A DNA stretch of 64,000 bases, taken from the IMG/VR virus record IMGVR_UViG_3300031951_000001, positions 186,001 to 250,000 of that record; one strand, given 5' to 3'. Below the pieces are notes generated by a model. It made no database searches. It saw only the letters and a program-made list of their open reading frames with translations, and was not told the origin of the DNA. The number at the start of each line of letters is the position of its first letter. Within the stretch, counting starts at the first letter, position 1. Positions 26,077-52,861 of the stretch are shown one piece after another. Made by a program: the position numbers and the translations under genes.

Positions 26077-27618
26077 TCAACCCAATGTATAAATTAAATT
26101 GTTCTTATCGAATGTGTAATTACCGTCAACAATTTTTGTATCCGAGTTATCAAATACTAAAATACCATCAGGACCACCCTCAAAAATAATCCAATCAGTC
26201 GAATAAACTTTTACTTGTCCTGTATCTAACATTGAAACCAAATTTTCATCGACAACTTTAACCGTTTTATATGGTTTTATTTGAGCGGTATATTCTTCAC
26301 CATCAATAATGATGATACAATCAACACCCATTATCATGTCAGATTTGGCACCTAACTCGCCAATCTTTTTAACATTTTTGTCTCCGAATTTTTCCTTGAG
26401 TTTCTTAACTACTAAATCTTCTCTGGCGTCACCGGCTTTGTTGGTCGAACCTAATATTGCCATGACATTTTGAAATGTGCCTGACTTTGATGAAAAAATT
26501 CTGTCTTTATATTCATCGAGTATTCTAACAAATTTTTTGGTCTCACTAACTTGTTGAGCCGGTGGTAATCCGATTAATTGTAATTCGGGTCTTCTTTCAT
26601 ATCTTAATACTGAATTCAAGTCGTGATATAAAACACAGAACGCATTGTAGTTGGTATTCAGTTTGTTAATTACCGAACGTCCTCTGTTTTCTAAATCAAA
26701 AATACCCGACATAGAACCTTCGGCGTATTCCCCATTCTCATACCAATTATCAGGAAACACTGACTTTAAAATTGACTCGATACCATAACGAAATGTGTTC
26801 TTAACTGCGGGATTGATATTAAAAATCATTCTTATCTCCTCAACTTTTTCTCTCGAACATCTTTCTGACTTACCTTCAGTGATAAGTTTTTTCATAACGG
26901 TGCTCTCGTTGATTTTTGTCTTGAGTTTCATTTCGTATAGTTTATTAACAAATTCCCAATTCACAACTTTCCAAAAGTTTGAAATGTATTCGTCTCGTTT
27001 GTTTCTGTATTTCAAATAATATGCGTGCTCCCAAAGGTCTAATCCAAGTATCGGATATCCACCACCCTTAACAACATTCATTAAGGGGTTGTCTTGGTTT
27101 GGGGTTGTTAAAATCTTTAACGTGTTTCTTTTTGTAAGAACCAACCAAACCCAACCTGAACCAAAACGTTCTTTTGCTTTTTCCTCAAATTGTTTTTTGA
27201 ATTCAACATAACTACCAAAATCACTTTTTATTTTATCTAAAATCTTACCATTAGCTTTTTGTGTTTTTGGCGATAACATCTTCCAAAACAATGCGTGGTT
27301 AAATGCCCCACCGGCATTGTCTCTGACTGTTTTATTGAATCGACTAATTGATTTAACAATTTGTTCTAATTCTAAATCTCCGTAATCTTTTTTTGATAAA
27401 GCTTTGTTTAACTTTTCAACATAACCTTTGTAGTGTTTGTTGTAATGTACATCCATCGTTTCAGAATCGATGAATGATTTTAAGGATGAATAGGCGTAAG
27501 GTAATTTTTCAATACCTATGTTTTTCATTTCGGTGAGTAAAGTTTGACTCGACTCGACCTTTTCTTCTTTCAAAATTGATTTGGTTAAGGTGTCTATTTT
27601 TTTTTCTATGTTCTTCAT
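26077..27618 (-). CDS. sod: Fe/Mn superoxide dismutase fused to a C-terminal PD-(D/E)xK-like domain
   Basis: LPYAYSSL, TMDVHYNKH, NAGGAFNHALFW, FGSGWVWL, NQDNP, DLWEHAYY (all four metal ligands present). About 270 extra C-terminal aa contain GVD...TAQIK. TATTTATA on the minus strand at 27635-27642. Confidence 0.9.
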   Translation of the reverse strand: MKNIEKKIDTLTKSILKEEKVESSQTLLTEMKNIGIEKLPYAYSSLKSFIDSETMDVHYNKHYKGYVEKLNKALSKKDYGDLELEQIVKSISRFNKTVRDNAGGAFNHALFWKMLSPKTQKANGKILDKIKSDFGSYVEFKKQFEEKAKERFGSGWVWLVLTKRNTLKILTTPNQDNPLMNVVKGGGYPILGLDLWEHAYYLKYRNKRDEYISNFWKVVNWEFVNKLYEMKLKTKINESTVMKKLITEGKSERCSREKVEEIRMIFNINPAVKNTFRYGIESILKSVFPDNWYENGEYAEGSMSGIFDLENRGRSVINKLNTNYNAFCVLYHDLNSVLRYERRPELQLIGLPPAQQVSETKKFVRILDEYKDRIFSSKSGTFQNVMAILGSTNKAGDAREDLVVKKLKEKFGDKNVKKIGELGAKSDMIMGVDCIIIIDGEEYTAQIKPYKTVKVVDENLVSMLDTGQVKVYSTDWIIFEGGPDGILVFDNSDTKIVDGNYTFDKNNLIYTLG

Positions 27619-27651
27619 TTGAAGCTTATTTTTCTATAAATAAGCCGAAGG

Positions 27652-29421
27652 TTAGAATTGTCTTACAGAATTTATCTTATTCATTATTTCCTCAACTATG
27701 TCACCGGAATTTATATTATCACCCATCACGGTTTCAATATTTTTCTTCTTGTTATTAACCATATCGTAGATTATTCCTTCGATTGTATTTTCAAATATCG
27801 GATAATAAACGGAAACTGAATTTTTTTGACCGTATCTATAAGCTCTATCTTCAGCTTGTGATAAATCACCTGGCACGAATGCCAAGTCGTTTATGATTAC
27901 CGCTTCTGCGGCGGTTAGGGTAATACCAACACCTGCGGCTTTTAAGTTACCAACGAATACTTTTATCTTTTCGTTGTCTTGAAATTGGTCTACCGCATAT
28001 TGTCTTTGAGCATTACTACAACTACCATCTAAAAATACAGCTTGTTTTCCGAAGTGACTGTAAATTTTATGTAATGTATCTGTAAAGTTTGTGAATATAA
28101 TGACTTTCTTTCCTTGTTCTAAAATATTTTCAGCAATCTCGATTGTGTTATTAACCTTTTCATCGGCAATGACCTGTCTAACTTTCATTAACTTACTAAA
28201 TTGTACGGTCAATGACCCTGATTCTTCTTTTTTGTTGTCATACCAATCATAATAATCACCCATCAATGCTTCGTATTGTTTTGACCTAACACGAAGATAA
28301 ACTGGTGTAATAATCTTGTCAGGTAAATCCAACACTTCTGTCTTCAATCTACGTAAAACTTGTCTTGCTGTTCTATCTCTCAACTCCTCCAAGTTTGATG
28401 CTCCTGTCACATTCCAAACCTTCCTATTACCCGCTCTGAATTGATACCCCTGACAATATCTAATGGCAAATGCCATCCAATTTTGAGCTACAGGACTATC
28501 AATAAGATGTAATAGATTAAAATAATTCATTGGTCGTGATGTCATCGGAGTACCAGTTAATAACCACAACTTATCAACATTCTTACAGATGTGATTAACA
28601 ATCTTTGTTCTTTGAGCTTGAGCATTCTGAACATAGTGGGCTTCATCCAAAATTATCAAATCAAAGTTTGATTGTTTGATTAATGAAGTTTCTTTGTCCT
28701 TTGGGTCATGAAAGTTTTTCAATATGTCATAATTCACAATAACAAAATCATGCTCGGTCGAATATGATTTACCTTCAGAAATAAACACACTTCGGTCTGT
28801 ATAATTCTGAATCTCACGAAGCCAATTGACCTTTAACGTTGCCGGACAGACAATTAAAATCTTTTTGGCTCCCGTTTCTAAAGCCGCAATAATTGTTGAT
28901 GTTGTTTTACCCAAACCCATGTCATCGGCAAGAATAAATCTTTTACTACCTGCCAATTTTTCTATTGCTTCTTTTTGATGTTCGAGTGGAGGACGATGAG
29001 AATACTTTGAATAGTTGATATCGACTTTCTCCATTCTGTGTGACTTAATCAACGCCCCTTTCGGTAACCAAAAATCGTGAATTGTCTCACCTGAAAAAAA
29101 CTTACCCCAAACGTGATAAGCTTTCTCCTTCTCAACCAACAATTTTTCTATCCAACATTCTGTGGGTATCTCCGTATATAATTTTTCATCGGCAATTTTC
29201 TTTGCGAAGTATGGGTCCAAATCAACCCATTTTTTGGCGACCTTTGGTGATGTTTCATGAAAGGTTGTGATATATTCTGATTGAGCTCGGGTGGGGTAAA
29301 ACTTTTTATTATGTTCTTTATTGTATTTTAATTTCAGGATATAGTTGTTTGCCCCCGAATAATTTTCGAGAATGCCCAAAGCTCGTTGCTCAATCAAATT
29401 TGTCGAGGTTGAATTCAACAC
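27652..29421 (-). CDS. SNF2-family (HARP/SMARCAL1-like) helicase/ATPase
   Basis: LADDMGLGKT, DEAH, LTGTP, AAGVGITL, QAEDRAYRYGQ. The true start is likely GTG 29421 or TTG 29418 because the 29466 start overlaps the divergent gene. Confidence 0.9.
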   Translation of the reverse strand: MLNSTSTNLIEQRALGILENYSGANNYILKLKYNKEHNKKFYPTRAQSEYITTFHETSPKVAKKWVDLDPYFAKKIADEKLYTEIPTECWIEKLLVEKEKAYHVWGKFFSGETIHDFWLPKGALIKSHRMEKVDINYSKYSHRPPLEHQKEAIEKLAGSKRFILADDMGLGKTTSTIIAALETGAKKILIVCPATLKVNWLREIQNYTDRSVFISEGKSYSTEHDFVIVNYDILKNFHDPKDKETSLIKQSNFDLIILDEAHYVQNAQAQRTKIVNHICKNVDKLWLLTGTPMTSRPMNYFNLLHLIDSPVAQNWMAFAIRYCQGYQFRAGNRKVWNVTGASNLEELRDRTARQVLRRLKTEVLDLPDKIITPVYLRVRSKQYEALMGDYYDWYDNKKEESGSLTVQFSKLMKVRQVIADEKVNNTIEIAENILEQGKKVIIFTNFTDTLHKIYSHFGKQAVFLDGSCSNAQRQYAVDQFQDNEKIKVFVGNLKAAGVGITLTAAEAVIINDLAFVPGDLSQAEDRAYRYGQKNSVSVYYPIFENTIEGIIYDMVNNKKKNIETVMGDNINSGDIVEEIMNKINSVRQF

Positions 29422-29427
29422 ATTATA

Positions 29428-29456
29428 AAAATAATAAACAATTCGATATTTATCAA
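29428..29456. promoter_or_regulatory. Overlapping divergent promoters: TTGATA-N17-TATTTT (minus, helicase) and TATTTATC (plus, 29447-54, neck gene)
   Basis: Both motifs are read directly in a ~36-nt intergenic gap. Confidence 0.5.
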
Positions 29457-29457
29457 T

Positions 29458-29973
29458 ATGGGACAACCGAGAGTACCAATATCAAGGATAGGAAAATTTT
29501 TTGGAGTTGAGGATTTCGACTTGGATATCTCTATGGGTGAGGAATGGTTACACGGTGATATGAATTTCACACTTGTTCTATACCGTGTGGATAGACAAAA
29601 AACCAAAACCGATGATGTATATGGAGAGGCTTTAATGGATGGAATAAAGTTTTTACCACCCGTAGAATTCAAAGCATTTGTACAAATCATGGCCCCTGAA
29701 AACAAATATTTAGGTAACTCAAAGATTGACCAAGTTGAGCCAGGTAACATTAGAATATCGGTGTATCAAAAACAGTTAGATGAACTTGAGATTGATATTA
29801 ATTACGGTGATTACATTGGTTATTATGAAACTGAAAATCGTGTTAGATATTATGTGGTCAACAATGATGGTCGTGTAATTTCTGATAATAAACATACATA
29901 CGCTGGGTACAAGCCATTCTATAGAACAATTATGGCGTCTGCCGTTGTAGATAACGAATTTAGAGGATTATGA
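29458..29973 (+). CDS. Head closure/neck protein (T4 gp14-like)
   Basis: DDVYGE motif and GDYI segment; positioned before the tail terminator and sheath genes. Confidence 0.55.
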   Translation: MGQPRVPISRIGKFFGVEDFDLDISMGEEWLHGDMNFTLVLYRVDRQKTKTDDVYGEALMDGIKFLPPVEFKAFVQIMAPENKYLGNSKIDQVEPGNIRISVYQKQLDELEIDINYGDYIGYYETENRVRYYVVNNDGRVISDNKHTYAGYKPFYRTIMASAVVDNEFRGL

Positions 29974-30128
29974 AAATAAAATTAACCGAAGACCAAATTA
30001 GAAGAATTTTAGAAATTGTTGATTCTGAAAAAGTTAAGTGTGATAAATGTGATTGGGAATGGAACTTATCAGATGGTGGGGATGGCCCATTTATTTGTCA
30101 TAAGTGTTGGCACGACAACGGAAAATAA
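29970..30128 (+). CDS. Small Zn-ribbon protein (52 aa), absent from ORF track
   Basis: MKIKLTEDQIRRILEIVDSEKVKCDKCDWEWNLSDGGDGPFICHKCWHDNGK; two CxxC motifs; ATGA overlap upstream and TAATG overlap downstream. Confidence 0.8.
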   Translation: MKIKLTEDQIRRILEIVDSEKVKCDKCDWEWNLSDGGDGPFICHKCWHDNGK

Positions 30129-31162
30129 TGGGATTACCAAAAAAAATAAAAAAATTCTTACCTCTAACAGAGTCGAAAACTTTGTTACCAAGAAGGAGGG
30201 AACTTGTTGATAAAATCAATAAGGATGGAACCTATTTGCCAAAATCTTTATTACATGCCGATTTAGATAAAGGATTTTTAGATTTTGTGAAAACAGATTT
30301 GGAAACGGTAGTGGAAGGTAAGAAAGTGCCTATGGTCGACATTCTAATAACGACCCAAAATTGGGCTCAATTTACAGAAACATGGAATTTTCAAAACCTT
30401 GACAAGAACGCTGAACCACCATTCATCACAGTTGTTAGAGTACCTGAAGTAAAATTTGGTACCAATCCCGCATTGTTGTACAACATACCAAATAGAAAAC
30501 TTTATTTCTATGCTCAAGTACCGACTTGGGATGGACAAAGACACGGATATGACATTTATAGAATACCACAACCAGTACCCGTAGATATATCTTATACCGT
30601 TAAGATTATCTGTAACCGAATGAGAGAACTAAATAAATTCAATAAGATTGTTATTGAAAAGTTTGCCTCAAGACAAGCCTATACTAATATCAAAGGACAC
30701 TATATCCCTATTGTGATGGGTGATATATCTGATGAATCAGTTCTTGATGTTGAAAAAAGAAAGTATTATATCCAAAGTTATTCATTTACCATGCTTGGTT
30801 TCTTAATAGATGAGGATGAGTTTGAGGTTTCTCCGGCAATCAATAGATTATTACAAATTGTGGAAGTCGACGAGAAAGTAGTTAGACGACAAGTTAAAAA
30901 TGAATTAAGTAAAGAACCAAAAATTAACGCTTTGTTTGTTGAGGGTAATGATGAGTTAAACGAGAGATTTGATTACACAACGGATTTGATTTTAGAGAAA
31001 ACAAAAAACGTAGAAACTTTTGAGGTCTATATTAACGGAACATTCTTCGGTGAAAGCCCAAACAAGATTCAAATTAACACGGGGGACGCTTTAAGACTTG
31101 TGGTAAAAAAATTAAATGACGAACAAGAATCGAAAGTAACATTCATGTCGATTGTTATTTAA
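30128..31162 (+). CDS. Tail terminator/completion protein (gp15-like)
   Basis: PQPVPVDISYTVKI and PFITVVR segments; precedes the sheath gene. ATG 30128 is coupled to the upstream stop. Confidence 0.6.
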   Translation: MGLPKKIKKFLPLTESKTLLPRRRELVDKINKDGTYLPKSLLHADLDKGFLDFVKTDLETVVEGKKVPMVDILITTQNWAQFTETWNFQNLDKNAEPPFITVVRVPEVKFGTNPALLYNIPNRKLYFYAQVPTWDGQRHGYDIYRIPQPVPVDISYTVKIICNRMRELNKFNKIVIEKFASRQAYTNIKGHYIPIVMGDISDESVLDVEKRKYYIQSYSFTMLGFLIDEDEFEVSPAINRLLQIVEVDEKVVRRQVKNELSKEPKINALFVEGNDELNERFDYTTDLILEKTKNVETFEVYINGTFFGESPNKIQINTGDALRLVVKKLNDEQESKVTFMSIVI

Positions 31163-31323
31163 TCCTCCCCGTATATATCTTTTTTTTCCTTACACTTTTC
31201 AATTATTAGTTTCTCCAAGAACCTATACATCTTAATACCGTTCTTATCACAATACTTTTTTAAGATGTCATGGACTTCTTGTGAAATCTTTAAATTTTTA
31301 ATCTGGCGACCATTCTGTGACAT
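31159..31323 (-). CDS. Small ribbon-helix-helix-like DNA-binding protein (54 aa), absent from ORF track
   Basis: MSQNGRQIKNLKISQEVHDILKKYCDKNGIKMYRFLEKLIIEKCKEKKDIYGED has the KNLKI strand, helix, G turn and helix pattern of RHH proteins. Confidence 0.7.
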   Translation of the reverse strand: MSQNGRQIKNLKISQEVHDILKKYCDKNGIKMYRFLEKLIIEKCKEKKDIYGED

Positions 31324-31328
31324 AAGAT

Positions 31329-31352
31329 AAAAAAGGCAGAAAATAGTCTGCC
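31329..31352 (-). terminator. Hairpin GGCAGA-N6-TCTGCC followed by T6 in the leader of the RHH gene
   Basis: The minus strand reads ggcagactattttctgcctttttt; it could be a terminator/attenuator or an operator. Confidence 0.45.
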
Positions 31353-31402
31353 CAATTTATAAATAGTTATCGGTAAGTCAAGAATTTTGGTTTTTTCTTG
31401 AA

Positions 31403-31410
31403 TATTTATC
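31403..31410 (+). promoter_or_regulatory. TATTTATC putative late promoter (sheath)
   Basis: Motif variant 31 nt upstream of the sheath ATG. Confidence 0.55.
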
Positions 31411-31441
31411 AATAAAATAAAAATAAAGAAACTCAAAACTA

Positions 31442-35011: not shown

Positions 35012-35022
35012 TAAATTTTAAT

Positions 35023-35060
35023 AGGACAGGCCGATATAAAAGTCGGTCTGTCCTTATTTA
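35023..35060 (+). terminator. 13-bp stem-loop after the sheath gene
   Basis: aggacaggccgat-ataaaa-gtcggtctgtcct followed by tattta. Confidence 0.65.
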
Positions 35061-35065
35061 TTAAT

Positions 35066-35884
35066 ATGAGAAAAAAATACATATTAGAAGGTATTACAGA
35101 AGAAGGTACTCCTGACATGAAATATTATGCGTTTGATTGGGATGATAATATCTTAACAATGCCGACCAAAATAGTACTCAAGGATGTTGATGGTGATGAA
35201 GTAGGTATGTCAACTGAAGATTTCGCTCATCATCGTGAAAAAATAGGAAAAGAAAATTTTGAATACGATGGACATGAAATTGTAGGTTTCGCTCAAAATC
35301 CATTTAGATACTTTAGTATAGAAGGTGATAAAAGATTTATTATTGACTCTATGTTAGCAAAACCAGGACCAGCTTGGACTGATTTTGTCGAAGCAATTAA
35401 TAACGGGTCTGTGTTTTCGATAGTCACCGCTAGAGGTCATACTCCAAGTGTTATTAAAGAGTCAGTATATAATATGATTATTTCAAATCATATGGGTATT
35501 AATTCAAATGAGTTAATAAAAAATTTAGAAAAATTCCGTGATTTAGAAGGTGTGGGAAAATCCACCAAAAGAGATATGATATTAGAATATCTTGATATGT
35601 GTCGTTTTTACCCTGTAACTTACGGAGAAGGTAGTGCGACTAATCCTGAAGAAGGAAAAATTAAAGCCCTAAAAGATTTTGTGGATTATGTTAAAAGAAT
35701 TTCTAAAATGATTAATAAGAAAGCATATCTGAAAAATAAGATTTCTAACAGATTTACACCAATGATTGGATTTTCAGATGACGACTTAAGAAATTTAGAA
35801 AAAGTTAAACAACATTTTGAAAAAGACCCAGAAAACATAATTAAAACTATATCAACTGCAGGAGGAATTAAAAAACCTTATTAA
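35066..35884 (+). CDS. HAD-superfamily phosphatase-like protein
   Basis: Motif I FDWDDN, motif II IVTARG, Lys in GKIK, motif IV FSDDD. Confidence 0.7.
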   Translation: MRKKYILEGITEEGTPDMKYYAFDWDDNILTMPTKIVLKDVDGDEVGMSTEDFAHHREKIGKENFEYDGHEIVGFAQNPFRYFSIEGDKRFIIDSMLAKPGPAWTDFVEAINNGSVFSIVTARGHTPSVIKESVYNMIISNHMGINSNELIKNLEKFRDLEGVGKSTKRDMILEYLDMCRFYPVTYGEGSATNPEEGKIKALKDFVDYVKRISKMINKKAYLKNKISNRFTPMIGFSDDDLRNLEKVKQHFEKDPENIIKTISTAGGIKKPY

Positions 35885-35951
35885 CTGGATACTTATAACT
35901 GGAATCTATTTGAAAAAAAACCAAAGTAAATAGAAAAAAAATAACTTGGTA

Positions 35952-35959
35952 TATTTATA
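35952..35959 (+). promoter_or_regulatory. TATTTATA putative late promoter (tail tube)
   Basis: Exact motif upstream of ATG 36003. Confidence 0.6.
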
Positions 35960-37612: not shown

Positions 37613-37628
37613 AAACTTTAATTTGTTC

Positions 37629-37636
37629 TATTTATA
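37629..37636 (+). promoter_or_regulatory. TATTTATA putative late promoter (tape measure)
   Basis: Exact motif 15 nt before ATG 37652. Confidence 0.6.
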
Positions 37637-39526: not shown

Positions 39527-39557
39527 CAAGTCATCTATTTATAATAAAGTTTAATTG

Positions 39558-44585: not shown

Positions 44586-44586
44586 C

Positions 44587-44913
44587 ATGGCCGGCAGACA
44601 ATATTTTAATAGGTATAGTAATTTTGTAATTAACGGACAACAAACTGTTGTTCCTTATGTAAATCTGCCGAGTAAATCAACAGATAAAAGATTTATATAT
44701 AAGATAGGTCAATCAAGATTAGATAAGATGTCACAACAATATTATGGTACTCCATATTTCGGATGGTTGATATTAGCAGCAAACCCAATTTATGGAGGTC
44801 AAGAATGGAATATTGCTGACGGGTCTATATTGACTATTCCGTTTCCTTTAGTAGCTTCGTTACAAGACTATAAAAACGCTTTAGACAATCACTTCTTCTA
44901 CTATGGTAGGTAA
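44587..44913 (+). CDS. LysM-like baseplate wedge protein (gp53-like)
   Basis: RLDKMSQQYYGTPYFGWLILAANP...LTIP. Confidence 0.8.
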   Translation: MAGRQYFNRYSNFVINGQQTVVPYVNLPSKSTDKRFIYKIGQSRLDKMSQQYYGTPYFGWLILAANPIYGGQEWNIADGSILTIPFPLVASLQDYKNALDNHFFYYGR

Positions 44914-47900
44914 TAACGAAAATATATTAACGGAATTTGATTATAACAACATTACCATAGTTGACCCAAATAAAGTAGTTGACGCTCAAGGTAAAGTTAA
45001 AGAAAGATTTGTGAACCAAGAAGACTTGGTTTATTATGTTAATTTGGAATGTAAAATGCTCCCAAGAACAAAACTAGCTTTGGGAGTTGCTAACAATGAT
45101 TCACTACAAACTATATCGGTCGCTTCGATAAATTTTTTGAAACCTGGTGGTAAAACATTTTTAGATAATTCTTATACCGACGAGATAACAGGAGAAAATT
45201 CAGTAAAAGGCGAAGGTGTTAACCAACCAAAAAAGACGGCAATTTCAAACCCAAATAAGAGTGACGATTTTTATATTAGACAAACAATAACATCAGGTGG
45301 AAAACAAGGGTCTACTGATAATGGGTTATTGGGGGTAAGAAATATAACTGTAAAGTTAGATACTTCATTCTTACCAATTATTACAGTAGAGCTTATTGAT
45401 GTTAAAGGCAGAGCATTATTTGAAGGTGGAAACAATTCTCCATACGCCGCGTTTTTTAATCTACCATACCCCAAATTCTTTTTAACCCTCAAAGGTTATT
45501 ACGGTAAGGCAATTCAATTAGAATTAATGTTACAAAGCTTCAATTCTCGTTTTGATGCTGGAACAAGTAATTTTGAAATATCATTAGTTTTTTACACTTA
45601 CAAATATACAATGTTGTCCGAAATATCGATGGGTATGTTGTTAGCGACCCCTCATATGTATAAATCTAGTGTTCAGGTTGCGGCATTGACAAGTGGTGGA
45701 GGAGCGACAACTCCTGTCAATCAAAGTTTTGCGGAAATTGGGTATGAAAAAATTAAAGAAATGTATTCAGAATATAAATCTAAAGGATTAATTCCTGATG
45801 ATTTTCCTGAATTAACTTTAATACAATTACAATATAGACTTGAGAACTTTATAAAAAACATTTTAGATAACTTTACTAAAGTTAATATGAAGCCTTTGGA
45901 TGACCTAGAGTTATATCAAAAGACTATCAATGAATATATAAGGGATGTTTATACGGCTCAAGGAGAAAAAGCGGGGTCTTGGTTTAACAAGTATATGGAT
46001 ACCAAAGCGCCATTCGTATTGGCAAATCAATTCAAGACCAAAATATATACGTTTAAAGGTAATTTAGATGCTGAAAAAAAACAAGCGGCGATTACAGAGT
46101 TAAAGTCTTTGATATCTAGTTATAATGAGAAACTAAAGACTAATAACACACTTGGGGATAAAGGGTCTTATACTATAGATAATAAGACCATACCGGCATC
46201 AATACCCGTTAAAATAACTTATGATAAAACATTTTTAAGAACATTCACGTCTGAAAATGAAATAAATTTTGAAGAAACGTTTAAGTTAATAAACGGTGTT
46301 CCTGCGACAGGAGATACACAAATTAACGAATTAAAGGCTGACTTTCAGAAAAGAAATTTATTTAATGCTTCTGATACAACAGTTAAAGACGGACAACCTG
46401 AAATAACCTATCAATATTTTGCATTTGATAACAACACCAATGAAATTATTAATAATGTTTCAAATTTTTTAGACCCGACTTTTTTTGGTGAGATAGACCA
46501 AATACAAAAAAAATTAAAAGCTTTTAGAATTCAAATAGAAGAAGACCTAACTAAAGCTCTATCTAATTTATTACAAAATTCAAATAACGGTATTGGGTTT
46601 GTCCCAAATATAAGGAATGTTTTGGCGGTTGTTTTTGCAAGTGGAGAAGCTTTCATAAGATTGATGGATGATGTTCACAGAGAGGCGTGGAATCAAAGGG
46701 ATGCTCCCGCAAGAAAAAATGCAATTTTTAATAAACAAATTGAAAGTGCGTCACAGGACGCTTTGGACCCGGGGTTAAATAATGAAAATCCTGTTTATCC
46801 ATGGCCTCAGTTTTTAGTAGAAACCGCAGGGGAAAACGGACAAGAAAAATATGAAATAAAATACCCTGGAGACAGCGATGTTATACAACAAACTCAAGGA
46901 TTTCAATATGATGTTTGGCCTGAAATAGAATTTGAAGAAGAATTTATAAAAGGATACATAGAAAGAACTTTACCACCACAAAACCCGAGCACAAATTTTA
47001 ATGAACTAACCGAACCAAAGAGAATTTCGTTCAATGCTATGGAATTCCCAATAAACAACATTGTTTTTTCGAATAAAGAAGAGATTAAGTTTTTCTTTGA
47101 AATTTATGAAAGAATAAATTTTGTAACATATTATTCAAAACTTTCGAGATGTTCTAACTCTATTGCGGAATCAGATAAAATAATCGATTTGTTGGCAGAT
47201 GCTGAGGCAACAAATATGGTTACAAGTTTGGGGGATACAAATCCGTTCCTACTTGACAAGTTAAAAAATTATGCGTTCAACTCTCAAAATTATTTATCCA
47301 CACTCAGGGGATTTTCGAATGATGGAACGGGACAAAGTTGGCAGAATTATTTGAGAGGAATTTACAATACAAATTATATAAGAAATTTAATATCAAATTC
47401 TGAGTTTGAATTTATGGATTTGAATACATTACTTGCACCAGTATCAGAACCGCTTGTAAGTTTAGAAAAAGAACAAGATATTATTGATTATTTGGCTCAA
47501 GCATCGCTCTCAAATGTTTTTGATGTTACTGATATATATCCTTTCATAAGTAACGCTTGGTCTAAAAGTGGGTTGGCGAATGGTAAAAATGTGGCCGACG
47601 CTAAACAAGCGTTTACCACCGACAAAATACTGACATTCAATAAAACTAAAAAAGTCATAACGAATTTTTTGGATGCGACAAGTCCCGAAGAAAAAAGAAT
47701 AGTAACTAACTTTATATATAAGACCAATAACGTACCCAACATTACTAACGAAAATATAAAAAGTTTTTACGAAGGAAGAACACCCAAGAAACAACTTGTT
47801 ACTGAAGGTAATATTACTTATTCAGGTTATAATGGGCTGTTAACAAGTAGTCAAACTACCTCAATGTTTAACACTCCATTCTTTATAAATTCAATTTCGG

Positions 47901-50900
47901 AAGGAGTTGAAAAGTTTAGAAATTTTGATAAACATCCATATAAAGTCCCCGCGTATCTTTTTCTAAATTCATTGCCCTTACCTACATTAAGGGAGAAATA
48001 TCAAACATTTGAGTCATCGACTGACGGAGGTGTTTTTAGTAAACCCCTTGACTATATATTTGCTACATTAAAAAAGTTTGGTGCAATCCACAGAGTACCA
48101 TATCCTTGGATTTTAAAGTTAGGTTCTATATGGCATAGATATAAAGAATACACCGATAAAGGTATAGACATACTTGACGGTTCTTGGAAAAACTTTGATT
48201 CAACCCGCAGTTTTGACCCATTTGGTTCTAACCCCTCAAGGAATTACGGATTAATTTTGAATGGTTCTCCATTCGACATTGTACTACAAAAAGATACGGT
48301 ATTTGGTACCGAAACATCTTCATTAATTAACACTGGATTTTATCCTAAACTTATTAATGATTTTAACGTATTCTATCAAGGATATAATATTATAGACACA
48401 AGTACTGAAATTAAAGGTACTTGCACATCCGCTGGAAACATATTAACCGTACTAACTGTAAATCATAATTCATTAACTACTGGATTTATTTTACAAGGAA
48501 ACGGATTAAACTCGGCTCAAATATTGTCACAAACAGATGGAATACCTGGCGGACCAGGCACTTATCAAATAAGCACTTCACAAAATGTGACCAATATAAG
48601 TTTTACAGTAGTAAATGCGTTTAACACACCATACAGTGACCAATCGATACAGGACTCATTTTTAAAAGGATTAAGTATAAACTATTCACAAGACTCTGTC
48701 ATAGATTTGGCGGAAGGTTTTGATGACGAGAACCCACAGAGAGACTTAAGAATTATAACTTGGAGTGTTTTAGTTGACGATAAAAATAGAACAAACCAAT
48801 TTATTATACCATCACAAGGGTCAACCTTCAATCAAACCAAAGTGGAATGTTTTGAAAACGGTAAAATTAAAAAAGAAGTTAATAATAATAAATCTATGTT
48901 TAATGGGTCCGTTAGAATGTTTTGGGCGGCACCTCATTATGGATATTTTGATTTAGACAATTTATTAAAACCATCACCTGAAGAATATCTAAAAACAATT
49001 TTTATAAATCAGGAAGAACAAAATCATTTTACATTAAATTCAAAACCAATTTATACCAAAATAAGTGAAATTTTTTCAGTATTTGAAAAAGAAATTTTAG
49101 ATAAATTTGAAGAAGAGTTCTTGAATTTTTCAGTATGTAAGTATGATTTTGTAGATAGTGGTTTGATAAAACCGATGGCGATGACTAATAGTTACGCCCA
49201 AGCAAGTAATCCGGGAACTACTGGAACGACTGGGGACACCGCGGCAACACAACAAACAGATTTAGAATCGAGTTTAACATCGACACTCAAAAACTTTCAG
49301 ACACTTTTCACAAACATGATGACTGTCGTTAAATTGACCGGAACAACGGGGGACCAATTGATAACAGATGTTCAAAATAAACAGACATCAGTTATTGCAA
49401 ATACACTTACAAAGTTCTTGACATATGATGCTGCGTTCAAATTCGGTAACCCATCTAACTATAATAAAAAATTATTTTATTCTTTTACACCTTCAATAAT
49501 AGAAGACCCTTTTACTTGGGAAAGTTATAAAGAAAAAACACCAAACGCATTACCTGTTGACGGAGGAACTACTACCCTCAGTGATTCTAAATTAAATTAC
49601 CCTGACGCTTGGAAAGCATTAGAAACTTATGTTGGTAAGTCAGATATTTCTAGTCTAACATATTCGGATAATGGGTCATATATTACGGATTTCTTTATTG
49701 ATTTAAATGTTGCTTTTACTGACAATAATGTTAAAAATTTATACCCAATTATAAAAATTTACGCTTCACAAAAACTAGCTCAATTTCAAGTAAATTCAAC
49801 ACCACCAACTTTACCATCAACTCAACCATACGAAGGGGCGTTAATTGAAACCTATGAATTATCTGGAGGGTCAAAAGTTTTAATTTTTAAACAAGGACCA
49901 AGAAAATTCGCGGTACTTGTTAATCAGAATGAAGAGACACTATATATAGGAGAAAAAATATCCATATCAGCAAATCCTGACAGCCAAGGAATTGTCAATG
50001 AAGCGTTACAGGCGTACTATGGTAATCTCGCAGAGTCACCGGAAGTTATTAATATAATTAAAAGTCCGGCACCACAATTTCCCGCAGTACCAGACCCTGT
50101 TGGTAAATGGAGTAAAACAACATTGTCAAACTCATTGGGAGAATTTGTTAGAAATACCGATGACTTCCAAAACAAAATAATAGATAGTTTCTTTACTAAA
50201 ATTAGAAAAAAACTACCCGATATCAGTTTAAAGTCAGAGGTTATTAATCAATCGGCTCTTGAGGGACCACAGAGTAAAGTTGATTTATGGGAAACATTCA
50301 AAGCGATTAATGATAAATGGATTGCCGGTAATGACTTTAAACAAAAAACATTATTTGAAGACATTCTATTATTAGATAGAGCTAGTAGAAATATAGGTGA
50401 TGTTGTTCTTTGTGACATTTATAAATTAAGAAATCAACTTATGACCATTGACCCAACAAACAATATGTTGGGTTTTATAACCACTATTCTTGTTGAGAAT
50501 AATTTTGTGGTAATGAACATACCATCATATGTTAATTTTTATAATGTTCAAGAAGCTCAGAAAAACGCAAAACCAAGATTGGATAGTACTTCAGATTTTG
50601 CTAATAATTTGTTTGGTACATTTTTGAATGTTGACTACCGAGACTCTAGTGCTAAAATGGTGTGTTTTTATGGTGGCAAACCAAGTGAGATTGTTGATAT
50701 AAAAGATAATGTGGATTTTAGATTTAGAGATGATGCGTTTGAAATCACTAAAGCGTCAAGTAATCCATTAGCAGAAAATCAAATTGGTAAAACCGATTGG
50801 GATAAATCAAATAAGGTGGTTGGCTTTAGTGTAGATATCGGACCTCAAAATCAATCAATATTTTATGGATTTAATATTAATCAAGGTAATAGCCAGAGTA

Positions 50901-51901
50901 CCGCAGAAGCTCTCCAAGTCCTAAATCAGATGGCAAACCAAGGAGGGAATAGGGCAGTGGCAACTCAAAACCTATCCCTATATAATTTGTATAAAAACAG
51001 AAGTTATACGTGTACCGTAAGTTTATTAGGCAATGCCATGATACAACCAACAATGTATTTCAATCTTAGGCACGTACCAATGTTTAGTGGTCCATATATG
51101 ATTACAAAGGTTACTCATACTGTAAATCCCGGTAGTTTCGAGACCATATTGGAGGCGGTAAGACAACCGACCGCGTCTTTACCTAAAATAGATAACTTCT
51201 TACAGATATTAAAAACAAATCTTTTAAATTCTGTTATTGCTGAAAGTAATAGACAAAAGGAGGCGATAAACAATGAGGCTAAAAAGGCCGAAAATGTTAA
51301 AGCTCAACAGAAACAATTAAATGATTTTGTTAATACAAATCCTTCTAATACTGCATCGGCTAACCAAACCTGCTCAGCTTCAACTAATTTTGTAGAATTT
51401 ACTTATAAAGCTGCGGTTAAACAGACACTTACAACAAATCAAATGGTTGGGAAAGTAAAATCTTTGGTTGGGGCAACTACGATTTCAGAAAAAGATAAAT
51501 TAAATATGTGTGTGTTTGCAGCGGCTTATATTGCATCAGGAACACAAACAGGATTTCAGGCAAATAATAATAACTTTATCGGATTGGATTTACAACAGAA
51601 TTGGAATAAAAATTATATGGAGACTAGATTTTTCTGTTCTTCGAGTAACGTGCCATTTGCATCATTTGCGAATGCGGATGACTCCATCAAATACTTGGTT
51701 CAAAGATGGAAAGATAGAATGTATCAAGTTCAACAAATTGATGCAAAATTAATTACTAAATTTTACATTTTAAATTTTGCGGCTACCAATACTGGAACTG
51801 GAAGAGAGGATATATATAATTCTTACGACCCAGCACTATTAAGTAATATTGAAACAGAGGTGCAAAACGCAATTAACTTGTTTAATTCCTCAAATGGATA
51901 A
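44903..51901 (+). CDS. Large baseplate hub protein (gp27/VgrG-like halves with long insertions, C-terminal glucosaminidase-like domain)
   Basis: N-terminal ITVELIDVKG...FFLTLKGYYG; C-terminal YTCTVSLLGNAMIQPTMYFNL...GPYMITKVTH; follows the gp53-like gene. Confidence 0.65.
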   Translation: MVGNNENILTEFDYNNITIVDPNKVVDAQGKVKERFVNQEDLVYYVNLECKMLPRTKLALGVANNDSLQTISVASINFLKPGGKTFLDNSYTDEITGENSVKGEGVNQPKKTAISNPNKSDDFYIRQTITSGGKQGSTDNGLLGVRNITVKLDTSFLPIITVELIDVKGRALFEGGNNSPYAAFFNLPYPKFFLTLKGYYGKAIQLELMLQSFNSRFDAGTSNFEISLVFYTYKYTMLSEISMGMLLATPHMYKSSVQVAALTSGGGATTPVNQSFAEIGYEKIKEMYSEYKSKGLIPDDFPELTLIQLQYRLENFIKNILDNFTKVNMKPLDDLELYQKTINEYIRDVYTAQGEKAGSWFNKYMDTKAPFVLANQFKTKIYTFKGNLDAEKKQAAITELKSLISSYNEKLKTNNTLGDKGSYTIDNKTIPASIPVKITYDKTFLRTFTSENEINFEETFKLINGVPATGDTQINELKADFQKRNLFNASDTTVKDGQPEITYQYFAFDNNTNEIINNVSNFLDPTFFGEIDQIQKKLKAFRIQIEEDLTKALSNLLQNSNNGIGFVPNIRNVLAVVFASGEAFIRLMDDVHREAWNQRDAPARKNAIFNKQIESASQDALDPGLNNENPVYPWPQFLVETAGENGQEKYEIKYPGDSDVIQQTQGFQYDVWPEIEFEEEFIKGYIERTLPPQNPSTNFNELTEPKRISFNAMEFPINNIVFSNKEEIKFFFEIYERINFVTYYSKLSRCSNSIAESDKIIDLLADAEATNMVTSLGDTNPFLLDKLKNYAFNSQNYLSTLRGFSNDGTGQSWQNYLRGIYNTNYIRNLISNSEFEFMDLNTLLAPVSEPLVSLEKEQDIIDYLAQASLSNVFDVTDIYPFISNAWSKSGLANGKNVADAKQAFTTDKILTFNKTKKVITNFLDATSPEEKRIVTNFIYKTNNVPNITNENIKSFYEGRTPKKQLVTEGNITYSGYNGLLTSSQTTSMFNTPFFINSISEGVEKFRNFDKHPYKVPAYLFLNSLPLPTLREKYQTFESSTDGGVFSKPLDYIFATLKKFGAIHRVPYPWILKLGSIWHRYKEYTDKGIDILDGSWKNFDSTRSFDPFGSNPSRNYGLILNGSPFDIVLQKDTVFGTETSSLINTGFYPKLINDFNVFYQGYNIIDTSTEIKGTCTSAGNILTVLTVNHNSLTTGFILQGNGLNSAQILSQTDGIPGGPGTYQISTSQNVTNISFTVVNAFNTPYSDQSIQDSFLKGLSINYSQDSVIDLAEGFDDENPQRDLRIITWSVLVDDKNRTNQFIIPSQGSTFNQTKVECFENGKIKKEVNNNKSMFNGSVRMFWAAPHYGYFDLDNLLKPSPEEYLKTIFINQEEQNHFTLNSKPIYTKISEIFSVFEKEILDKFEEEFLNFSVCKYDFVDSGLIKPMAMTNSYAQASNPGTTGTTGDTAATQQTDLESSLTSTLKNFQTLFTNMMTVVKLTGTTGDQLITDVQNKQTSVIANTLTKFLTYDAAFKFGNPSNYNKKLFYSFTPSIIEDPFTWESYKEKTPNALPVDGGTTTLSDSKLNYPDAWKALETYVGKSDISSLTYSDNGSYITDFFIDLNVAFTDNNVKNLYPIIKIYASQKLAQFQVNSTPPTLPSTQPYEGALIETYELSGGSKVLIFKQGPRKFAVLVNQNEETLYIGEKISISANPDSQGIVNEALQAYYGNLAESPEVINIIKSPAPQFPAVPDPVGKWSKTTLSNSLGEFVRNTDDFQNKIIDSFFTKIRKKLPDISLKSEVINQSALEGPQSKVDLWETFKAINDKWIAGNDFKQKTLFEDILLLDRASRNIGDVVLCDIYKLRNQLMTIDPTNNMLGFITTILVENNFVVMNIPSYVNFYNVQEAQKNAKPRLDSTSDFANNLFGTFLNVDYRDSSAKMVCFYGGKPSEIVDIKDNVDFRFRDDAFEITKASSNPLAENQIGKTDWDKSNKVVGFSVDIGPQNQSIFYGFNINQGNSQSTAEALQVLNQMANQGGNRAVATQNLSLYNLYKNRSYTCTVSLLGNAMIQPTMYFNLRHVPMFSGPYMITKVTHTVNPGSFETILEAVRQPTASLPKIDNFLQILKTNLLNSVIAESNRQKEAINNEAKKAENVKAQQKQLNDFVNTNPSNTASANQTCSASTNFVEFTYKAAVKQTLTTNQMVGKVKSLVGATTISEKDKLNMCVFAAAYIASGTQTGFQANNNNFIGLDLQQNWNKNYMETRFFCSSSNVPFASFANADDSIKYLVQRWKDRMYQVQQIDAKLITKFYILNFAATNTGTGREDIYNSYDPALLSNIETEVQNAINLFNSSNG

Positions 51902-51939
51902 TTTTTCTATATTGAATAATATTTATAAATAAAAATACT

Positions 51940-52164
51940 ATGAACACAAAAGAAGTTTTGGATAGATACTTGGGTAAGAATACCCGTATCACCGAAAAAG
52001 AAACAGGTAATGGTTACAAAGAAGTTTGTGATTTGGATACAGGAGAATGTTATACTTTGAGAATGAAAGATGGGTTGATTGAAAGAGTAGATAACACGAT
52101 GAAACAAAATAAAAAAATCCAAGTCGAAACAATGACTGGTGTTAAACAACTATTAAACGGTTAA
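51940..52164 (+). CDS. Hypothetical protein (74 aa)
   Basis: ORF with VCDLDTGECY; preceded by TATTTATA at 51920-27. Confidence 0.65.
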   Translation: MNTKEVLDRYLGKNTRITEKETGNGYKEVCDLDTGECYTLRMKDGLIERVDNTMKQNKKIQVETMTGVKQLLNG

Positions 52165-52168
52165 AAAA

Positions 52169-52861
52169 ATGTCCATAGATAACAAAATTTTAGAAGAAAT
52201 TCAGAGATATAAGAATATTAATCAATATATCACTGAACAAGAAGTGCCACCGGTTCCCGAAGACCCGGCAGCAGCGTTACCACCCCCACCTGATGCGGGT
52301 GCCGCATTACCTCCTCCACCAGGAGCTCCTGCCCCTGACGCAGGAGCTGCACCACCTCCATCACCACCAGCTGCGGGAGCTGAACCACAACCTGTAGATG
52401 TTGCAACTGACCCTGATGTTGAAAAGGTTGGTGATGAAAAGGAGAAAAGAGAAGAATTAGAAATAACTGACTTGGTACAATCACAACAAAATGTTGAGAA
52501 AAAACAAGAAGAGTATTTCGAAAATTTATTTAAACACCTCGAAGATTTAGAATCAAAACTTGGTAATATGGATTCAATTGTTAGTAAGTTGAATGACCTT
52601 GAAGCCAAAGTTGAAAAATACAGACCAAAAACTCCTGAAGAAAAATTGGAGTTAAGAAGTTTAGATTCAGGACCATTCAATCAAAAATTATCTGAATTTT
52701 TTGAGGACAAACAAGGAGACCTTGAAAAAGCGGGTAAGAATGAGTATGTTTTAACTTCGGATGAGGTTGAAGGATTTTCACCAAACGAAATCAAAAAAAG
52801 TTTTAGAAACTTTGATGATGAAAATGAGGATGATATACAAGACTTCAAAGAAATTAGATAA
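52169..52861 (+). CDS. Pro/Ala-rich acidic coiled-coil protein (possible scaffold/internal head protein)
   Basis: N-terminal ILEE/ITEQ, a disordered PPPP/A region, then a coiled coil. Confidence 0.6.
   Translation: MSIDNKILEEIQRYKNINQYITEQEVPPVPEDPAAALPPPPDAGAALPPPPGAPAPDAGAAPPPSPPAAGAEPQPVDVATDPDVEKVGDEKEKREELEITDLVQSQQNVEKKQEEYFENLFKHLEDLESKLGNMDSIVSKLNDLEAKVEKYRPKTPEEKLELRSLDSGPFNQKLSEFFEDKQGDLEKAGKNEYVLTSDEVEGFSPNEIKKSFRNFDDENEDDIQDFKEIR

What the first reader, a model, noticed from the sequence alone, without database searches (positions are those of the whole stretch)
26077..52861. Shared (I/L)xE-containing N-terminal leaders mark a possible set of packaged cargo proteins
Several unrelated late-motif or late-operon genes begin with a basic/helical leader ending in I/L-x-E before the functional domain: SOD (LLTE), Zn-ribbon 29970 (KLTE, ILE), HAD 35066 (ILE, ITE), 52169 (ILEE, ITE) and 51940 (ITE). 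This resembles T4 capsid-targeting leaders removed by gp21. Inference: a portable head-targeting tag recruits enzymes into the capsid.
Basis: inference. Interest (0 to 1): 0.6.

Follow-up and report, generated by a model that had tools for sequence, protein, structure and literature searches.

The report
Phage head-targeting leader peptides

Summary
On its own, though, (I/L)xE is too common to mean anything: 39-45% of all N-termini carry one.

Genome-wide there is a real signal. The window lies in a 322-kb phage that has a T4 gp21-type protease (Peptidase_S77) and a gp23-type capsid protein. (I/L)xE is about twice as dense in the first 20 residues. An unbiased comparison of N-termini gives one cluster of 36 leader-bearing proteins.

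The core is a 22-residue leader, MKK(I/V)(I/V)RLTESDLxR(I/L)VKR(V/I)(I/V)xE. It heads 11 genes here and at least 162 in related metagenomic phages, on 141 unrelated protein bodies. Conservation stops exactly at the Glu.

Leader genes tend to follow the late promoter motif that also precedes structural genes. The bodies specifically avoid internal (I/L)xE (observed/expected 0.75) and favour (I/L)xD (1.28).

Of the five named genes:
- The Zn-ribbon is a sequence member of the leader family.
- 52169 is well supported.
- SOD and the HAD-like gene are moderately supported.
- 51940 is not supported.

Cleavage and packaging are inferred, not shown. I rate this a new, greatly expanded variant of the T4 capsid-targeting sequence.

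The parts
26077..27618 (-). Fe/Mn superoxide dismutase gene (513 aa): 30-aa N-terminal extension, SOD domain, then a 284-aa C-terminal region with a PD-(D/E)xK-nuclease-like end
   Evidence: Pfam Sod_Fe_N and Sod_Fe_C, aa 37-226. C-terminal model pLDDT 71; Foldseek best hits Hjc, I-Ssp6803I and NhoI at E 0.009-0.06.
27529..27618 (-). SOD leader, aa 1-30, ending LTE; candidate cleavage after Glu30
   Evidence: Across 9 orthologues P3 is L/I/V, P2 varies and P1 Glu is invariant, directly before MK(N/K/T)IGI(E/D)KLPY.
26905..26913 (-). INE (aa 236-238), followed by Ser: second candidate site at the junction of the SOD domain and the C-terminal region
   Evidence: [ILV]-[NK]-E-S is present in all 7 orthologues that have a C-terminal extension, although those extensions differ.
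27635..27643 (-). Late-promoter-like motif (CTTATTTATA on the gene's strand) upstream of SOD
29446..29454 (+). Late-promoter-like motif ahead of the unit 29458 / Zn-ribbon / 30128
29970..30128 (+). 52-aa Zn-ribbon gene. Leader MKIKLTEDQIRRILE (nt 29970-30014) belongs to the 36-protein leader cluster
   Evidence: Smith-Waterman score 49 to a class A leader. The slot is hypervariable: relatives hold other leader-bearing genes there or none. Contigs of related strains skip 29969->30125/30128.
35054..35062 (+). Late-promoter-like motif 3 nt before the first ATG of the HAD-like gene
   Evidence: A 12-nt motif-to-ATG spacing is the commonest class.
35066..35884 (+). HAD-like gene (272 aa). N-terminal extension aa 1-17 carries ILE and ITE (nt 35066-35101)
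   Evidence: [IL]xE aligns in 8 of 9 orthologues with P2 variable. Three orthologues (L142, L136, L128) lack the internal Met, so the extension is translated. AF2 gives residues 1-16 pLDDT <50. Bodies hold 13 [IL]xE against 24 expected, z -2.6.
51919..51927 (+). Late-promoter-like motif ahead of 51940 and 52169
51940..52164 (+). 74-aa conserved small protein. ITE at aa 17-19 is probably not a leader site
   Evidence: Conserved along its whole length. P3 varies I/V/Y/M/T in orthologues. [IL]xE is enriched, not avoided.
52169..52861 (+). 230-aa protein: conserved 23-aa N-terminal segment ending YITE|Q (nt 52169-52237), Pro/Ala-rich linker, charged C-terminal domain
   Evidence: In the 8 close orthologues P3 Ile, P1 Glu and P1' Gln are invariant and P2 varies F/T/M/L/S/V. 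Bodies hold 6 [IL]xE against 24.8 expected (z -4.5) and 40 [IL]xD against 21 (z +4.6).

Best explanation
What the genome is. The window belongs to a ~322-kb T4-superfamily myophage of freshwater Bacteroidota, of the clade that carries a ribosomal bS21 gene in its head module.

Proposed mechanism. Its late genes include a large set (about 36-40 of 357) whose products start with short, basic, amphipathic leaders containing one or two (I/L)-x-E sites. The archetype is the 22-residue MKK(I/V)(I/V)RLTESDLxR(I/L)VKR(V/I)(I/V)xE.
1. The leader docks the protein onto the scaffolding core of the assembling prohead.
2. The gp21-type Peptidase_S77 protease cuts after the Glu residues (LTE-9 and IxE-22 in the archetype).
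3. The mature protein is left free inside the capsid, available to be ejected with the DNA.

- The Zn-ribbon carries a member of this leader family.
- 52169, SOD and the HAD-like protein carry family-specific leaders of the same type.
- SOD looks like a module cut out at both ends.
- 51940 is probably not part of the system.

Shown here: the leader's conservation and sharp end, its attachment to unrelated bodies, its late-promoter context, its co-occurrence with the protease, and avoidance of (I/L)xE inside cargo.
Inferred, not shown: cleavage, targeting to the capsid, and ejection.
For: 1. Machinery.
- Peptidase_S77 at genome 117086-117811 (87 bits), with LIE at residues 16-18. T4 gp21 has LIE-9 (PMC9026906).
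- gp23-like capsid protein (215 bits). The position of T4's maturation cut falls at about residue 45, where LKE44, LYE51 and INE60 lie.

2. Leader.
- 11 genes in this genome.
- 162 unique ORFs in IMG/VR loci. Information content is 2-4 bits per position from Met1 to Glu22 and at most 0.4 bits beyond P1' (1.2 bits at P1'). P2 of the last site is free.
- 154 of 162 have no in-frame Met upstream.

3. Portability.
- 172 bodies fall into 141 BLAST-unrelated clusters.
- Codons differ synonymously: 263 synonymous against 381 non-synonymous against 346 identical codon pairs.
- One late-operon slot holds a different leader-bearing gene in each of several relatives.

4. N-termini as a class.
- Pairs scoring at least 40: 120 among N-termini against 11 among interior segments.
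- The largest cluster is 36 leader proteins. The next is 14 Sec signal peptides, which serves as a positive control.

5. Timing.
- [IL]xE in residues 2-10: 40% of genes behind the late motif, 10% behind the host-type TAnnTTTG motif, 18% of the rest.
- Two or more sites in the first 25 aa: 24 of 93 against 22 of 246, Fisher p = 1.4e-4.

6. Co-occurrence. All 49 leader-bearing records are pieces of 240-410-kb genomes. S77 is present in 7 of 7 records at least 90% complete and 9 of 9 at least 82% complete.

7. Site avoidance.
- Class A bodies: [IL]xE observed/expected 0.75 (z -4.1; cluster bootstrap 95% CI 0.63-0.87).
- In the same bodies: [IL]xD 1.28, [IL]xQ 1.29, VxE 1.13.
- 889 neighbouring non-leader ORFs: [IL]xE 1.10.
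- In T4, Asp at the P1 position blocks processing (PMC9026906).

8. The named genes: orthologue conservation of P3 and P1 with P2 free, for SOD, 52169 and the HAD-like gene.
Against: - No proteomic, structural or biochemical observation of cleavage or packaging exists. The phage is uncultured.
- The complex prediction for leader with protease could not be run.
- Co-occurrence with S77 is within one clade, so it is not an independent association.
- The 11 class A bodies and the wider leader cluster of this genome alone show no [IL]xE depletion (9 against 8.4; 38 against 37.2). Power is low. The depletion rests on the metagenomic set.
- SOD bodies show no depletion (45 against 37).
- Bodies are not basic, unlike T4 internal proteins (net charge -0.024 per residue, same as the genome).
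- About 10% of all genes would be capsid cargo, which is a lot.
- The scaffold-like protein is only mildly rich in sites (11 in 506 aa).
- The single Zn-ribbon orthologue found lacks [IL]xE.
Confidence: 0.6

Rival explanations
1. The leader is a functional N-terminal helix that stays on the protein. It could be an oligomerisation helix or a handle for one shared phage or host partner. It would be neither cleaved nor capsid-directed.
For: - Residues 10-22 form a strongly amphipathic segment (hydrophobic moment 0.80).
- 22 conserved residues are more than a cleavage site needs.
- A leader-like segment occurs internally in one protein (genome 306427-307839, aa 251-270).
Against: - It does not predict that conservation ends exactly at a Glu in an (I/V/L)-x-E context with P2 free.
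- It does not predict the specific depletion of [IL]xE with excess [IL]xD in the bodies.
- It does not explain conserved sites on both sides of the SOD domain.
Confidence: 0.17
2. The leader targets proteins elsewhere: to the tail or baseplate, or to the cell envelope or periplasm, rather than the capsid interior. Cleavage would be by the same or another Glu-specific protease.
For: - Some leader proteins carry cell-wall domains: PG_binding_1 (genome 314821-315891) and Glyco_hydro_19 (genome 66050-66868), and PG_binding_1 among IMG/VR members.
- The window genes lie among tail genes.
Against: - The leader has no hydrophobic core and forms a cluster separate from the genome's 14 Sec signal peptides.
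- The only protease known to have this specificity acts inside the prohead (PMC9026906).
- Leader genes also sit inside the head module (genome 118104, 126638, 130110).
Confidence: 0.1
3. For the five named genes the motif is a chance feature of Lys/Ile/Leu/Glu-rich N-termini, and nothing links them.
For: - 39-45% of N-termini carry the motif.
- The HAD-like gene and 51940 are not unusually similar to the leader cluster (72nd and 87th percentile).
- 51940's P3 is not conserved and its body is enriched in [IL]xE.
Against: - The Zn-ribbon is a clear sequence member.
- SOD, 52169 and the HAD-like gene keep P3 and P1 across orthologues while P2 drifts.
- 52169 avoids [IL]xE strongly.
Confidence: 0.08
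4. The shared 5' ends are DNA-level homology arms of mobile late-gene cassettes (terminator, promoter and first codons). They would be kept because they promote gene shuffling, not because of the peptide.
For: - Repeated cassette structure in genome 36.4-40.3 kb: stem-loop, CCCCCTACCCCCTTTTTT, GATATATTTAT, ATG.
- Presence/absence and replacement of genes in one slot.
Against: - Leader codons differ freely at synonymous sites while the peptide is kept (60-84% DNA identity).
- This is compatible with the main explanation as an extra role, not a replacement for it.
Confidence: 0.05

Closest known systems
Capsid targeting sequences (CTS) of phage T4 internal proteins IPI/IPII/IPIII and Alt, removed by the gp21 prohead protease (PMC9026906, PMC5694885)
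   Same: - A short N-terminal propeptide ending in (L/I)-x-E.
- Shared by otherwise unrelated proteins.
- A gp21-family protease and a gp23-family capsid protein in the same genome.
- Hypervariable cargo genes.
- Asp tolerated where Glu would be cut.
   Different: - 22 residues with two sites, against about 10 in T4.
- No sequence similarity to the T4 CTS as I recall it (not tested here).
- Carried by dozens of genes per genome and more than 140 unrelated bodies across a clade, not 3-4 proteins.
- Bodies are not basic.
- Several parallel leader classes exist in one genome.
- No experimental proof.
Long propeptides of phiKZ/SPN3US-type giant phage head and ejection proteins (PMC5694885, PMC10052503)
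   Same: - A giant phage with many inner-head proteins processed at an x-x-E motif.
- Multiple sites inside the propeptide.
- Identical N-termini on diverged paralogues.
   Different: - Those motifs are (S/A/G)-x-E and the propeptides often exceed 100 residues.
- The protease is more distant.
- Here the leader is short and P3 is Ile/Leu (VxE is not avoided).
N-terminal trafficking domains of polymorphic toxins, and Sec signal peptides
   Same: A conserved N-terminal address joined to variable C-terminal payloads. The clustering method recovered the genome's own Sec signal peptides as a separate cluster.
   Different: - No hydrophobic core.
- Ends at Glu rather than at a signal-peptidase site.
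- Found in a phage late-gene context.

Membership tests
T4-type capsid targeting sequence / gp21-processed propeptide | Located at the extreme N-terminus, about 10-20 residues | tested here: met
   All 11 strong matches start at residue 1. 154 of 162 IMG/VR copies have no in-frame Met upstream. The conserved length is 22 residues.
T4-type capsid targeting sequence / gp21-processed propeptide | Ends in (L/I)-x-E, the gp21 cleavage motif | tested here: met
   Class A last site: P3 I70/V14/L14%, P2 free, P1 Glu 91%. The inner LTE is 98-100% conserved. VxE is not avoided in bodies but [IL]xE is.
T4-type capsid targeting sequence / gp21-processed propeptide | The genome encodes a gp21-family protease and a gp23-family capsid protein with a propeptide | tested here: met
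   PF03420 at 87 bits and PF07068 at 215 bits. [IL]xE sites lie at the position equivalent to T4's cut.
T4-type capsid targeting sequence / gp21-processed propeptide | Shared by proteins that are otherwise unrelated | tested here: met
   141 clusters among 172 bodies. No BLAST similarity among this genome's 11 class A bodies.
T4-type capsid targeting sequence / gp21-processed propeptide | Late expression together with head genes | tested here: inconclusive
   Only a promoter-motif association. The runs found were probably DNA and kept as contigs, so there are no expression data.
T4-type capsid targeting sequence / gp21-processed propeptide | Propeptide removed in the virion, and leader sufficient to package a foreign protein | not testable with these tools
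   Needs virion proteomics and a fusion experiment. Indirect support comes from [IL]xE avoidance in bodies.
T4-type capsid targeting sequence / gp21-processed propeptide | Sequence similarity to the T4 CTS itself | not tested
   I had no tool-derived T4 CTS sequence. tblastn of the leader against GenBank phages found nothing.
Fe/Mn superoxide dismutase (gene 26077-27618) | Both Pfam domains above the curated cut-off | tested here: met
   Sod_Fe_N 77.8 bits and Sod_Fe_C 137.5 bits.
HAD superfamily (gene 35066-35884) | Family profile match or HAD Rossmann-like fold, with the DxD, T, K and DD motifs | tested here: inconclusive
   No Pfam or PDB sequence match. FDWDDN, TARGH and GFSDDD are invariant in 9 orthologues. 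Foldseek best hits are HAD phosphatases, but only at E 0.01-0.2.
Sec signal peptide | Hydrophobic core after a basic N-terminus | tested here: not met
   The leader has mean hydrophobicity -0.27 and no hydrophobic run. It clusters apart from the 14 genuine signal peptides.

The most novel reading that the evidence does not exclude
A whole clade of 240-410-kb Bacteroidota phages has turned the T4 capsid-targeting principle into a general addressing system. One nearly invariant 22-residue leader, plus sister leaders, would load a fast-changing repertoire of hundreds of unrelated proteins into the capsid. These include cell-wall enzymes, a NUDIX hydrolase, esterases and a superoxide dismutase released from a larger precursor. 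They would be delivered into the host with the DNA. Cargo sequences would be shaped by the need to avoid the maturation protease.
Probability: 0.45. Interest if true: 0.8.

Novelty: new variant of a known kind. Interest (0 to 1): 0.68.

Why it matters
- If the leaders are capsid addresses, the cargo of an uncultured group of giant phages can be read directly from sequence. That means roughly 40 candidate injected proteins per genome, and hundreds across the clade.
- Such injected proteins are the likely first-minute weapons against host defences.
- The principle is otherwise known mainly from three or four T4 proteins and from proteomics of phiKZ-like phages.
- The (I/L)xE-avoidance signature is a new, purely computational way to recognise protease-exposed virion proteins.
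- A 22-residue tag that works on more than 140 different bodies would be a ready-made tool for loading foreign proteins into phage heads in Bacteroidota.
- A packaged superoxide dismutase would be, as far as my searches show, unreported for phages.

Tried and rejected
- megablast of the sheath gene against GenBank phages: no match.
- First gene calls used a Shine-Dalgarno score. I dropped this because the genome shows almost no SD sites, and replaced it with the first-ATG rule.
- tblastn of the 26-aa leader against GenBank phages: no match. This is not evidence of absence for so short a query.
- Full-text search for LTESDL, RLTESEL and KIIRLTE: no paper. Search for phage superoxide dismutase phrases: none.
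No verdict.
- Scaffold-like protein as a site-rich substrate: only 11 sites in 506 aa, not significant.
- Sequencing runs: 4 holders labelled RNA-Seq are probably DNA and kept as contigs, from related strains at 90-95% identity. They say nothing on expression, only the Zn-ribbon presence/absence joint.
- PDB sequence search of the SOD C-terminal region and of the HAD-like protein: nothing significant.
- Flavobacterium phage immuto, the nearest cultured relative by capsid protein at about 41%: the class A leader is absent and both pattern hits were spurious.
- I did not run the large representative-protein search, because the claim does not rest on absence of relatives.
- No other genetic code was used.

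Full report
**What the window is.**
The 64-kb window is bases 186001-250000 of a single 322,372-bp virus record with 34% G+C. Almost no genes have a Shine-Dalgarno site, as expected for a Bacteroidota host.

The window holds tail and replication genes:
- a 1189-aa sheath, a tube protein and a T4-type baseplate protein;
- gp32, ribonucleotide reductase and an SNF2 helicase.

Outside the window the genome has a T4-type head module:
- Peptidase_S77, the gp21 family, at 117086-117811;
- an acidic scaffold-like protein at 119143-120663;
- a gp23-type major capsid protein at 120692-122545;
- a ribosomal bS21 gene on the opposite strand inside this module, at 116341-116496.

That bS21 arrangement is the hallmark of the freshwater Bacteroidota phages of up to 331 kb described in 10.1101/2021.10.11.463225. 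The nearest cultured relatives by capsid protein are only about 40% identical: Flavobacterium phage immuto, Microcystis phage Mel-JY01 and RM378.

**Checking the observation.**
By itself that means little. With Ile+Leu at 15% and Glu at 6.6%, 39% of all N-termini have an [IL]xE in the first 30 residues and 45% in the first 40.

- Motif density is 0.027 and 0.022 per position in residues 1-10 and 11-20, against 0.012 overall.
- N-termini with two or more motifs are four times as common as interior windows (16.3% against 4.0%).

Two upstream motifs separate the genes.
- (A/G)TATTTAT(A/C/T), 12-24 nt before the ATG, precedes the terminase, protease, scaffold (with the capsid gene downstream), sheath, tube and baseplate genes.
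- TAnnTTTG is the host-type -7 box.

[IL]xE in residues 2-10 occurs in 40% of genes behind the first motif, 10% behind the second and 18% of the rest. Two or more sites occur in 24 of 93 against 22 of 246 (p = 1.4e-4). By my reading of the first 25 residues listed, one of eight replication proteins in the window carries a site.

**What causes the signal.**
Listing the N-termini shows families of near-identical leaders.

The clearest is class A: M-K-K-x-(I/V)-R-L-T-E-S-D-L-x-R-(I/L)-V-K-R-(V/I)-(I/V)-x-E. It heads 11 genes, all starting at residue 1, and their remaining sequences show no BLAST similarity to each other. Their codons differ freely at synonymous sites, so the peptide is what is conserved, not the DNA.

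Other classes:
- B: MK(F/Y)LITES..
- C: M.(L/I)KESI(K/R)RILREE
- D: ..L(I/L)(T/S)EEEK..I..L(H/Y)....(I/L)xEQ

An unbiased all-against-all comparison of residues 2-25 gives 120 pairs scoring at least 40, against 11 for interior segments. The largest cluster has 36 proteins and comprises classes A, B and D. The second largest is the genome's 14 Sec signal peptides, a useful positive control for the method.

**Beyond this genome.**
A word-based protein search with one class A protein returned dozens of metagenomic proteins that share only the leader (83-90% identity) and diverge straight after I-x-E.

From the loci fetched I extracted 162 unique leader ORFs.
- Residues 14-22 were not part of the search pattern, yet they are conserved at 2-3 bits per position, apart from the free P2.
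- Glu22 is 91% conserved.
- The next residue is weakly Q/E/S. Everything after that is at background.
- Together with this genome's 11, the 172 bodies form 141 BLAST-unrelated clusters, with a median protein length of 137 aa.
- Of the 80 largest, only a few have Pfam domains: NUDIX, PG_binding_1, UPF0227 and an alpha/beta hydrolase.

In this genome, class D-type leaders head a PG_binding_1 protein and a GH19 lysozyme-like protein.

All 49 leader-bearing records are fragments of genomes of about 240-410 kb. Peptidase_S77 is found in 26 of 49, in 7 of 7 that are at least 90% complete and in 9 of 9 at least 82% complete.

**An independent test of exposure to the protease.**
If these proteins meet an (I/L)xE-specific protease, selection should remove that motif from their mature parts. 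It does.

| Motif | Set | Observed/expected |
|---|---|---|
| [IL]xE | 172 class A bodies | 0.75 (178 against 236.6; z -4.1; cluster bootstrap CI 0.63-0.87) |
| [IL]xD | 172 class A bodies | 1.28 (CI 1.15-1.41) |
| [IL]xQ | 172 class A bodies | 1.29 |
| [IL]xK | 172 class A bodies | 1.17 |
| VxE | 172 class A bodies | 1.13 |
| Ex[IL] | 172 class A bodies | 1.19 |
| [IL]xE | 889 non-leader neighbour ORFs, same loci | 1.10 |
| [IL]xE | this genome's other proteins | 1.17 |

The Glu-to-Asp shift matches the T4 finding that Asp at the cleavage position blocks processing (PMC9026906). This is the strongest argument that the leaders belong to a cleavage system and are not just a shared helix.

One caution applies. 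This genome's own 11 class A bodies are too few to show the effect (9 against 8.4), and the wider leader cluster here shows none (38 against 37.2).

**The five named genes.**

*Zn-ribbon (29970-30128).*
- Its N-terminus MKIKLTEDQIRRILE scores 49 against a class A leader, and it belongs to the 36-protein cluster.
- It sits in a hypervariable slot between two conserved late genes. One relative has a diverged Zn-ribbon lacking the motif. Two have unrelated genes of 334 and 163 aa that also begin with leaders (..MKIMLSESQYFKVMRLVNE....MKILITERQQNLIIENE..). Three have nothing there.
- Contigs of related strains skip the gene exactly.
- This mirrors the T4 internal-protein locus.

*52169-52861.*
- The first 23 residues are conserved in the 8 close orthologues and end in Y-I-x-E-Q. 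P3, P1 and P1' are invariant and P2 is free. A variable Pro/Ala-rich linker follows.
- Its mature part holds 6 [IL]xE where 24.8 are expected, and 40 [IL]xD where 21 are expected. The orthologues are not independent, but the effect is large.

*SOD (26077-27618).*
- In all 9 orthologues, F/L-(L/I/V)-x-E directly precedes MK(N/K/T)IGI(E/D)KLPY. This holds whether the preceding part is a 30-aa leader or a 130-aa HEWVH domain with a linker.
- In all 7 orthologues with a C-terminal extension, (I/L/V)-(N/K)-E-S follows the SOD domain, although the extensions differ.
- So the SOD looks like a module released by cuts on both sides.
- It shows no motif avoidance.

*HAD-like (35066-35884).*
- 8 of 9 orthologues align an [IL]xE with P2 free, about 10 residues before the invariant KYYAFDWDDN.
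- Three orthologues have no internal Met, so the extension is translated.
- AF2 leaves residues 1-16 unstructured.
- [IL]xE is depleted (13 against 24, z -2.6).
- The HAD assignment itself is only weakly supported.

*51940-52164.*
- It is conserved along its whole length. P3 of its 'ITE' varies I/V/Y/M/T, and [IL]xE is enriched in it.
- I do not count it as a member.

**Mechanism and its status.**
The best reading is a T4-type capsid-targeting and processing system. In T4:
- 10-20-residue propeptides of IPI-III, Alt and gp24 bring proteins into the scaffolding core;
- gp21 cuts after (L/I)-x-E;
- the leader is portable to foreign proteins;
- related phages carry other CTS-bearing proteins (PMC9026906, PMC5694885).

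Everything that can be checked from sequence is met here: position, motif, protease, unrelated bodies, late context and site avoidance. The capsid protein has LKE44, LYE51 and INE60 where T4's maturation cut maps. The protease has LIE at residues 16-18, as T4 gp21 has LIE-9.

Cleavage, capsid location and ejection remain inferences. Rivals are:
- an uncleaved functional helix;
- targeting to another compartment, suggested by the cell-wall domains on some members;
- pure chance for the five genes;
- a DNA-level cassette role. The cassette structure is real, but the synonymous variation argues against it as the sole explanation.

**Novelty.**
I found no paper containing the leader sequence, no Pfam family on any member and no match in GenBank phages. 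The principle is known from T4. The new parts are:
- the scale, about 10% of genes and more than 140 unrelated bodies;
- the length and near-invariance of the leader across a clade;
- the coexistence of several leader classes;
- the avoidance signature.

Hence my rating: a new variant of a known kind.

Noticed in passing
genome 116341-116496 (-), outside the window (window = genome 186001-250000): A ribosomal protein bS21 gene (PF01165, 32.7 bits) lies on the reverse strand inside the head module, between the portal-side genes and the protease. This is the arrangement reported for freshwater Bacteroidota bS21 phages (10.1101/2021.10.11.463225).
   Followed up: partly
window 26080-26931 (-), C-terminal 284 aa of the SOD protein: The SOD is fused to a helical region plus a domain whose AF2 model (pLDDT 71) best matches PD-(D/E)xK nucleases (Hjc, I-Ssp6803I, NhoI; E 0.009-0.06). 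It has a GVD..x13..AQIKP motif. Orthologues carry different C-terminal domains after the same (I/L/V)(N/K)ES junction.
   Followed up: partly
L128, L130, L132, L140 (relatives' SOD genes); genome 66915-67304: In four relatives a ~130-aa domain with an HEWVH (HExxH-like) motif is fused in front of the SOD. In this genome the same domain is a separate 129-aa gene, divergently placed next to the leader-bearing GH19 gene.
   Followed up: no
genome 36400-40400 (L004:10400-14400): An island of leader genes is built from repeated cassettes: stem-loop CCCTTCGGG.., then CCCCCTACCCCCTTTTTT, then GATATATTTAT, then ATG and the leader. It resembles the mobile promoter/stem-loop cassettes of T4-type phages. 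22 of the 36 leader genes lie in genome 26-45 kb.
   Followed up: partly
whole genome; window examples 31402-31410, 35951-35959, 37628-37636, 39535-39543: There are two distinct upstream motifs. (A/G)TATTTAT(A/C/T) sits before 101 genes, including the structural ones, often only 12 nt before the ATG, which would give near-leaderless mRNAs. TAnnTTTG sits before 45 genes and is the host-type -7 box.
   Followed up: partly
genome-wide (e.g. 122699-123493, 123634-124215, 124249-126558): 14 phage proteins carry Bacteroidota-type Sec signal peptides (..SFSQ/..FAQ). Several follow the late motif and lie next to the capsid gene.
   Followed up: no
window 29969-30128: Contigs from four aquatic metagenome runs (related strains, 90-95% identity) join 29969 to 30125/30128. 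In those strains the Zn-ribbon gene is missing precisely.
   Followed up: yes
L146:2712-4012 (Flavobacterium phage immuto, MW353176.1 117587-118887): Two adjacent genes just upstream of the terminase share a different leader, M..NF(N/D)L(R/K).FL(T/V)ENKLT.N..(L/I)LKE, again with two (I/L)xE sites. One of them is annotated as a cobalamin adenosyltransferase. This suggests clade-specific leaders in other T4-related Bacteroidota phages.
   Followed up: no
genome 306427-307839, aa 251-270: An internal copy of a leader-like segment (ITMTEGELINFIEKIIKEEK) occurs in a 470-aa protein that also has a leader-like N-terminus.
   Followed up: no
window 3391-14505 and 14579-18820: Two giant ORFs (3704 and 1413 aa) begin with near-identical N-termini, MEF(V/F)I(R/K)K(N/G)ATLPLLK. 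Other large structural proteins also share N-terminal modules (clusters 3, 5 and 6).
   Followed up: no
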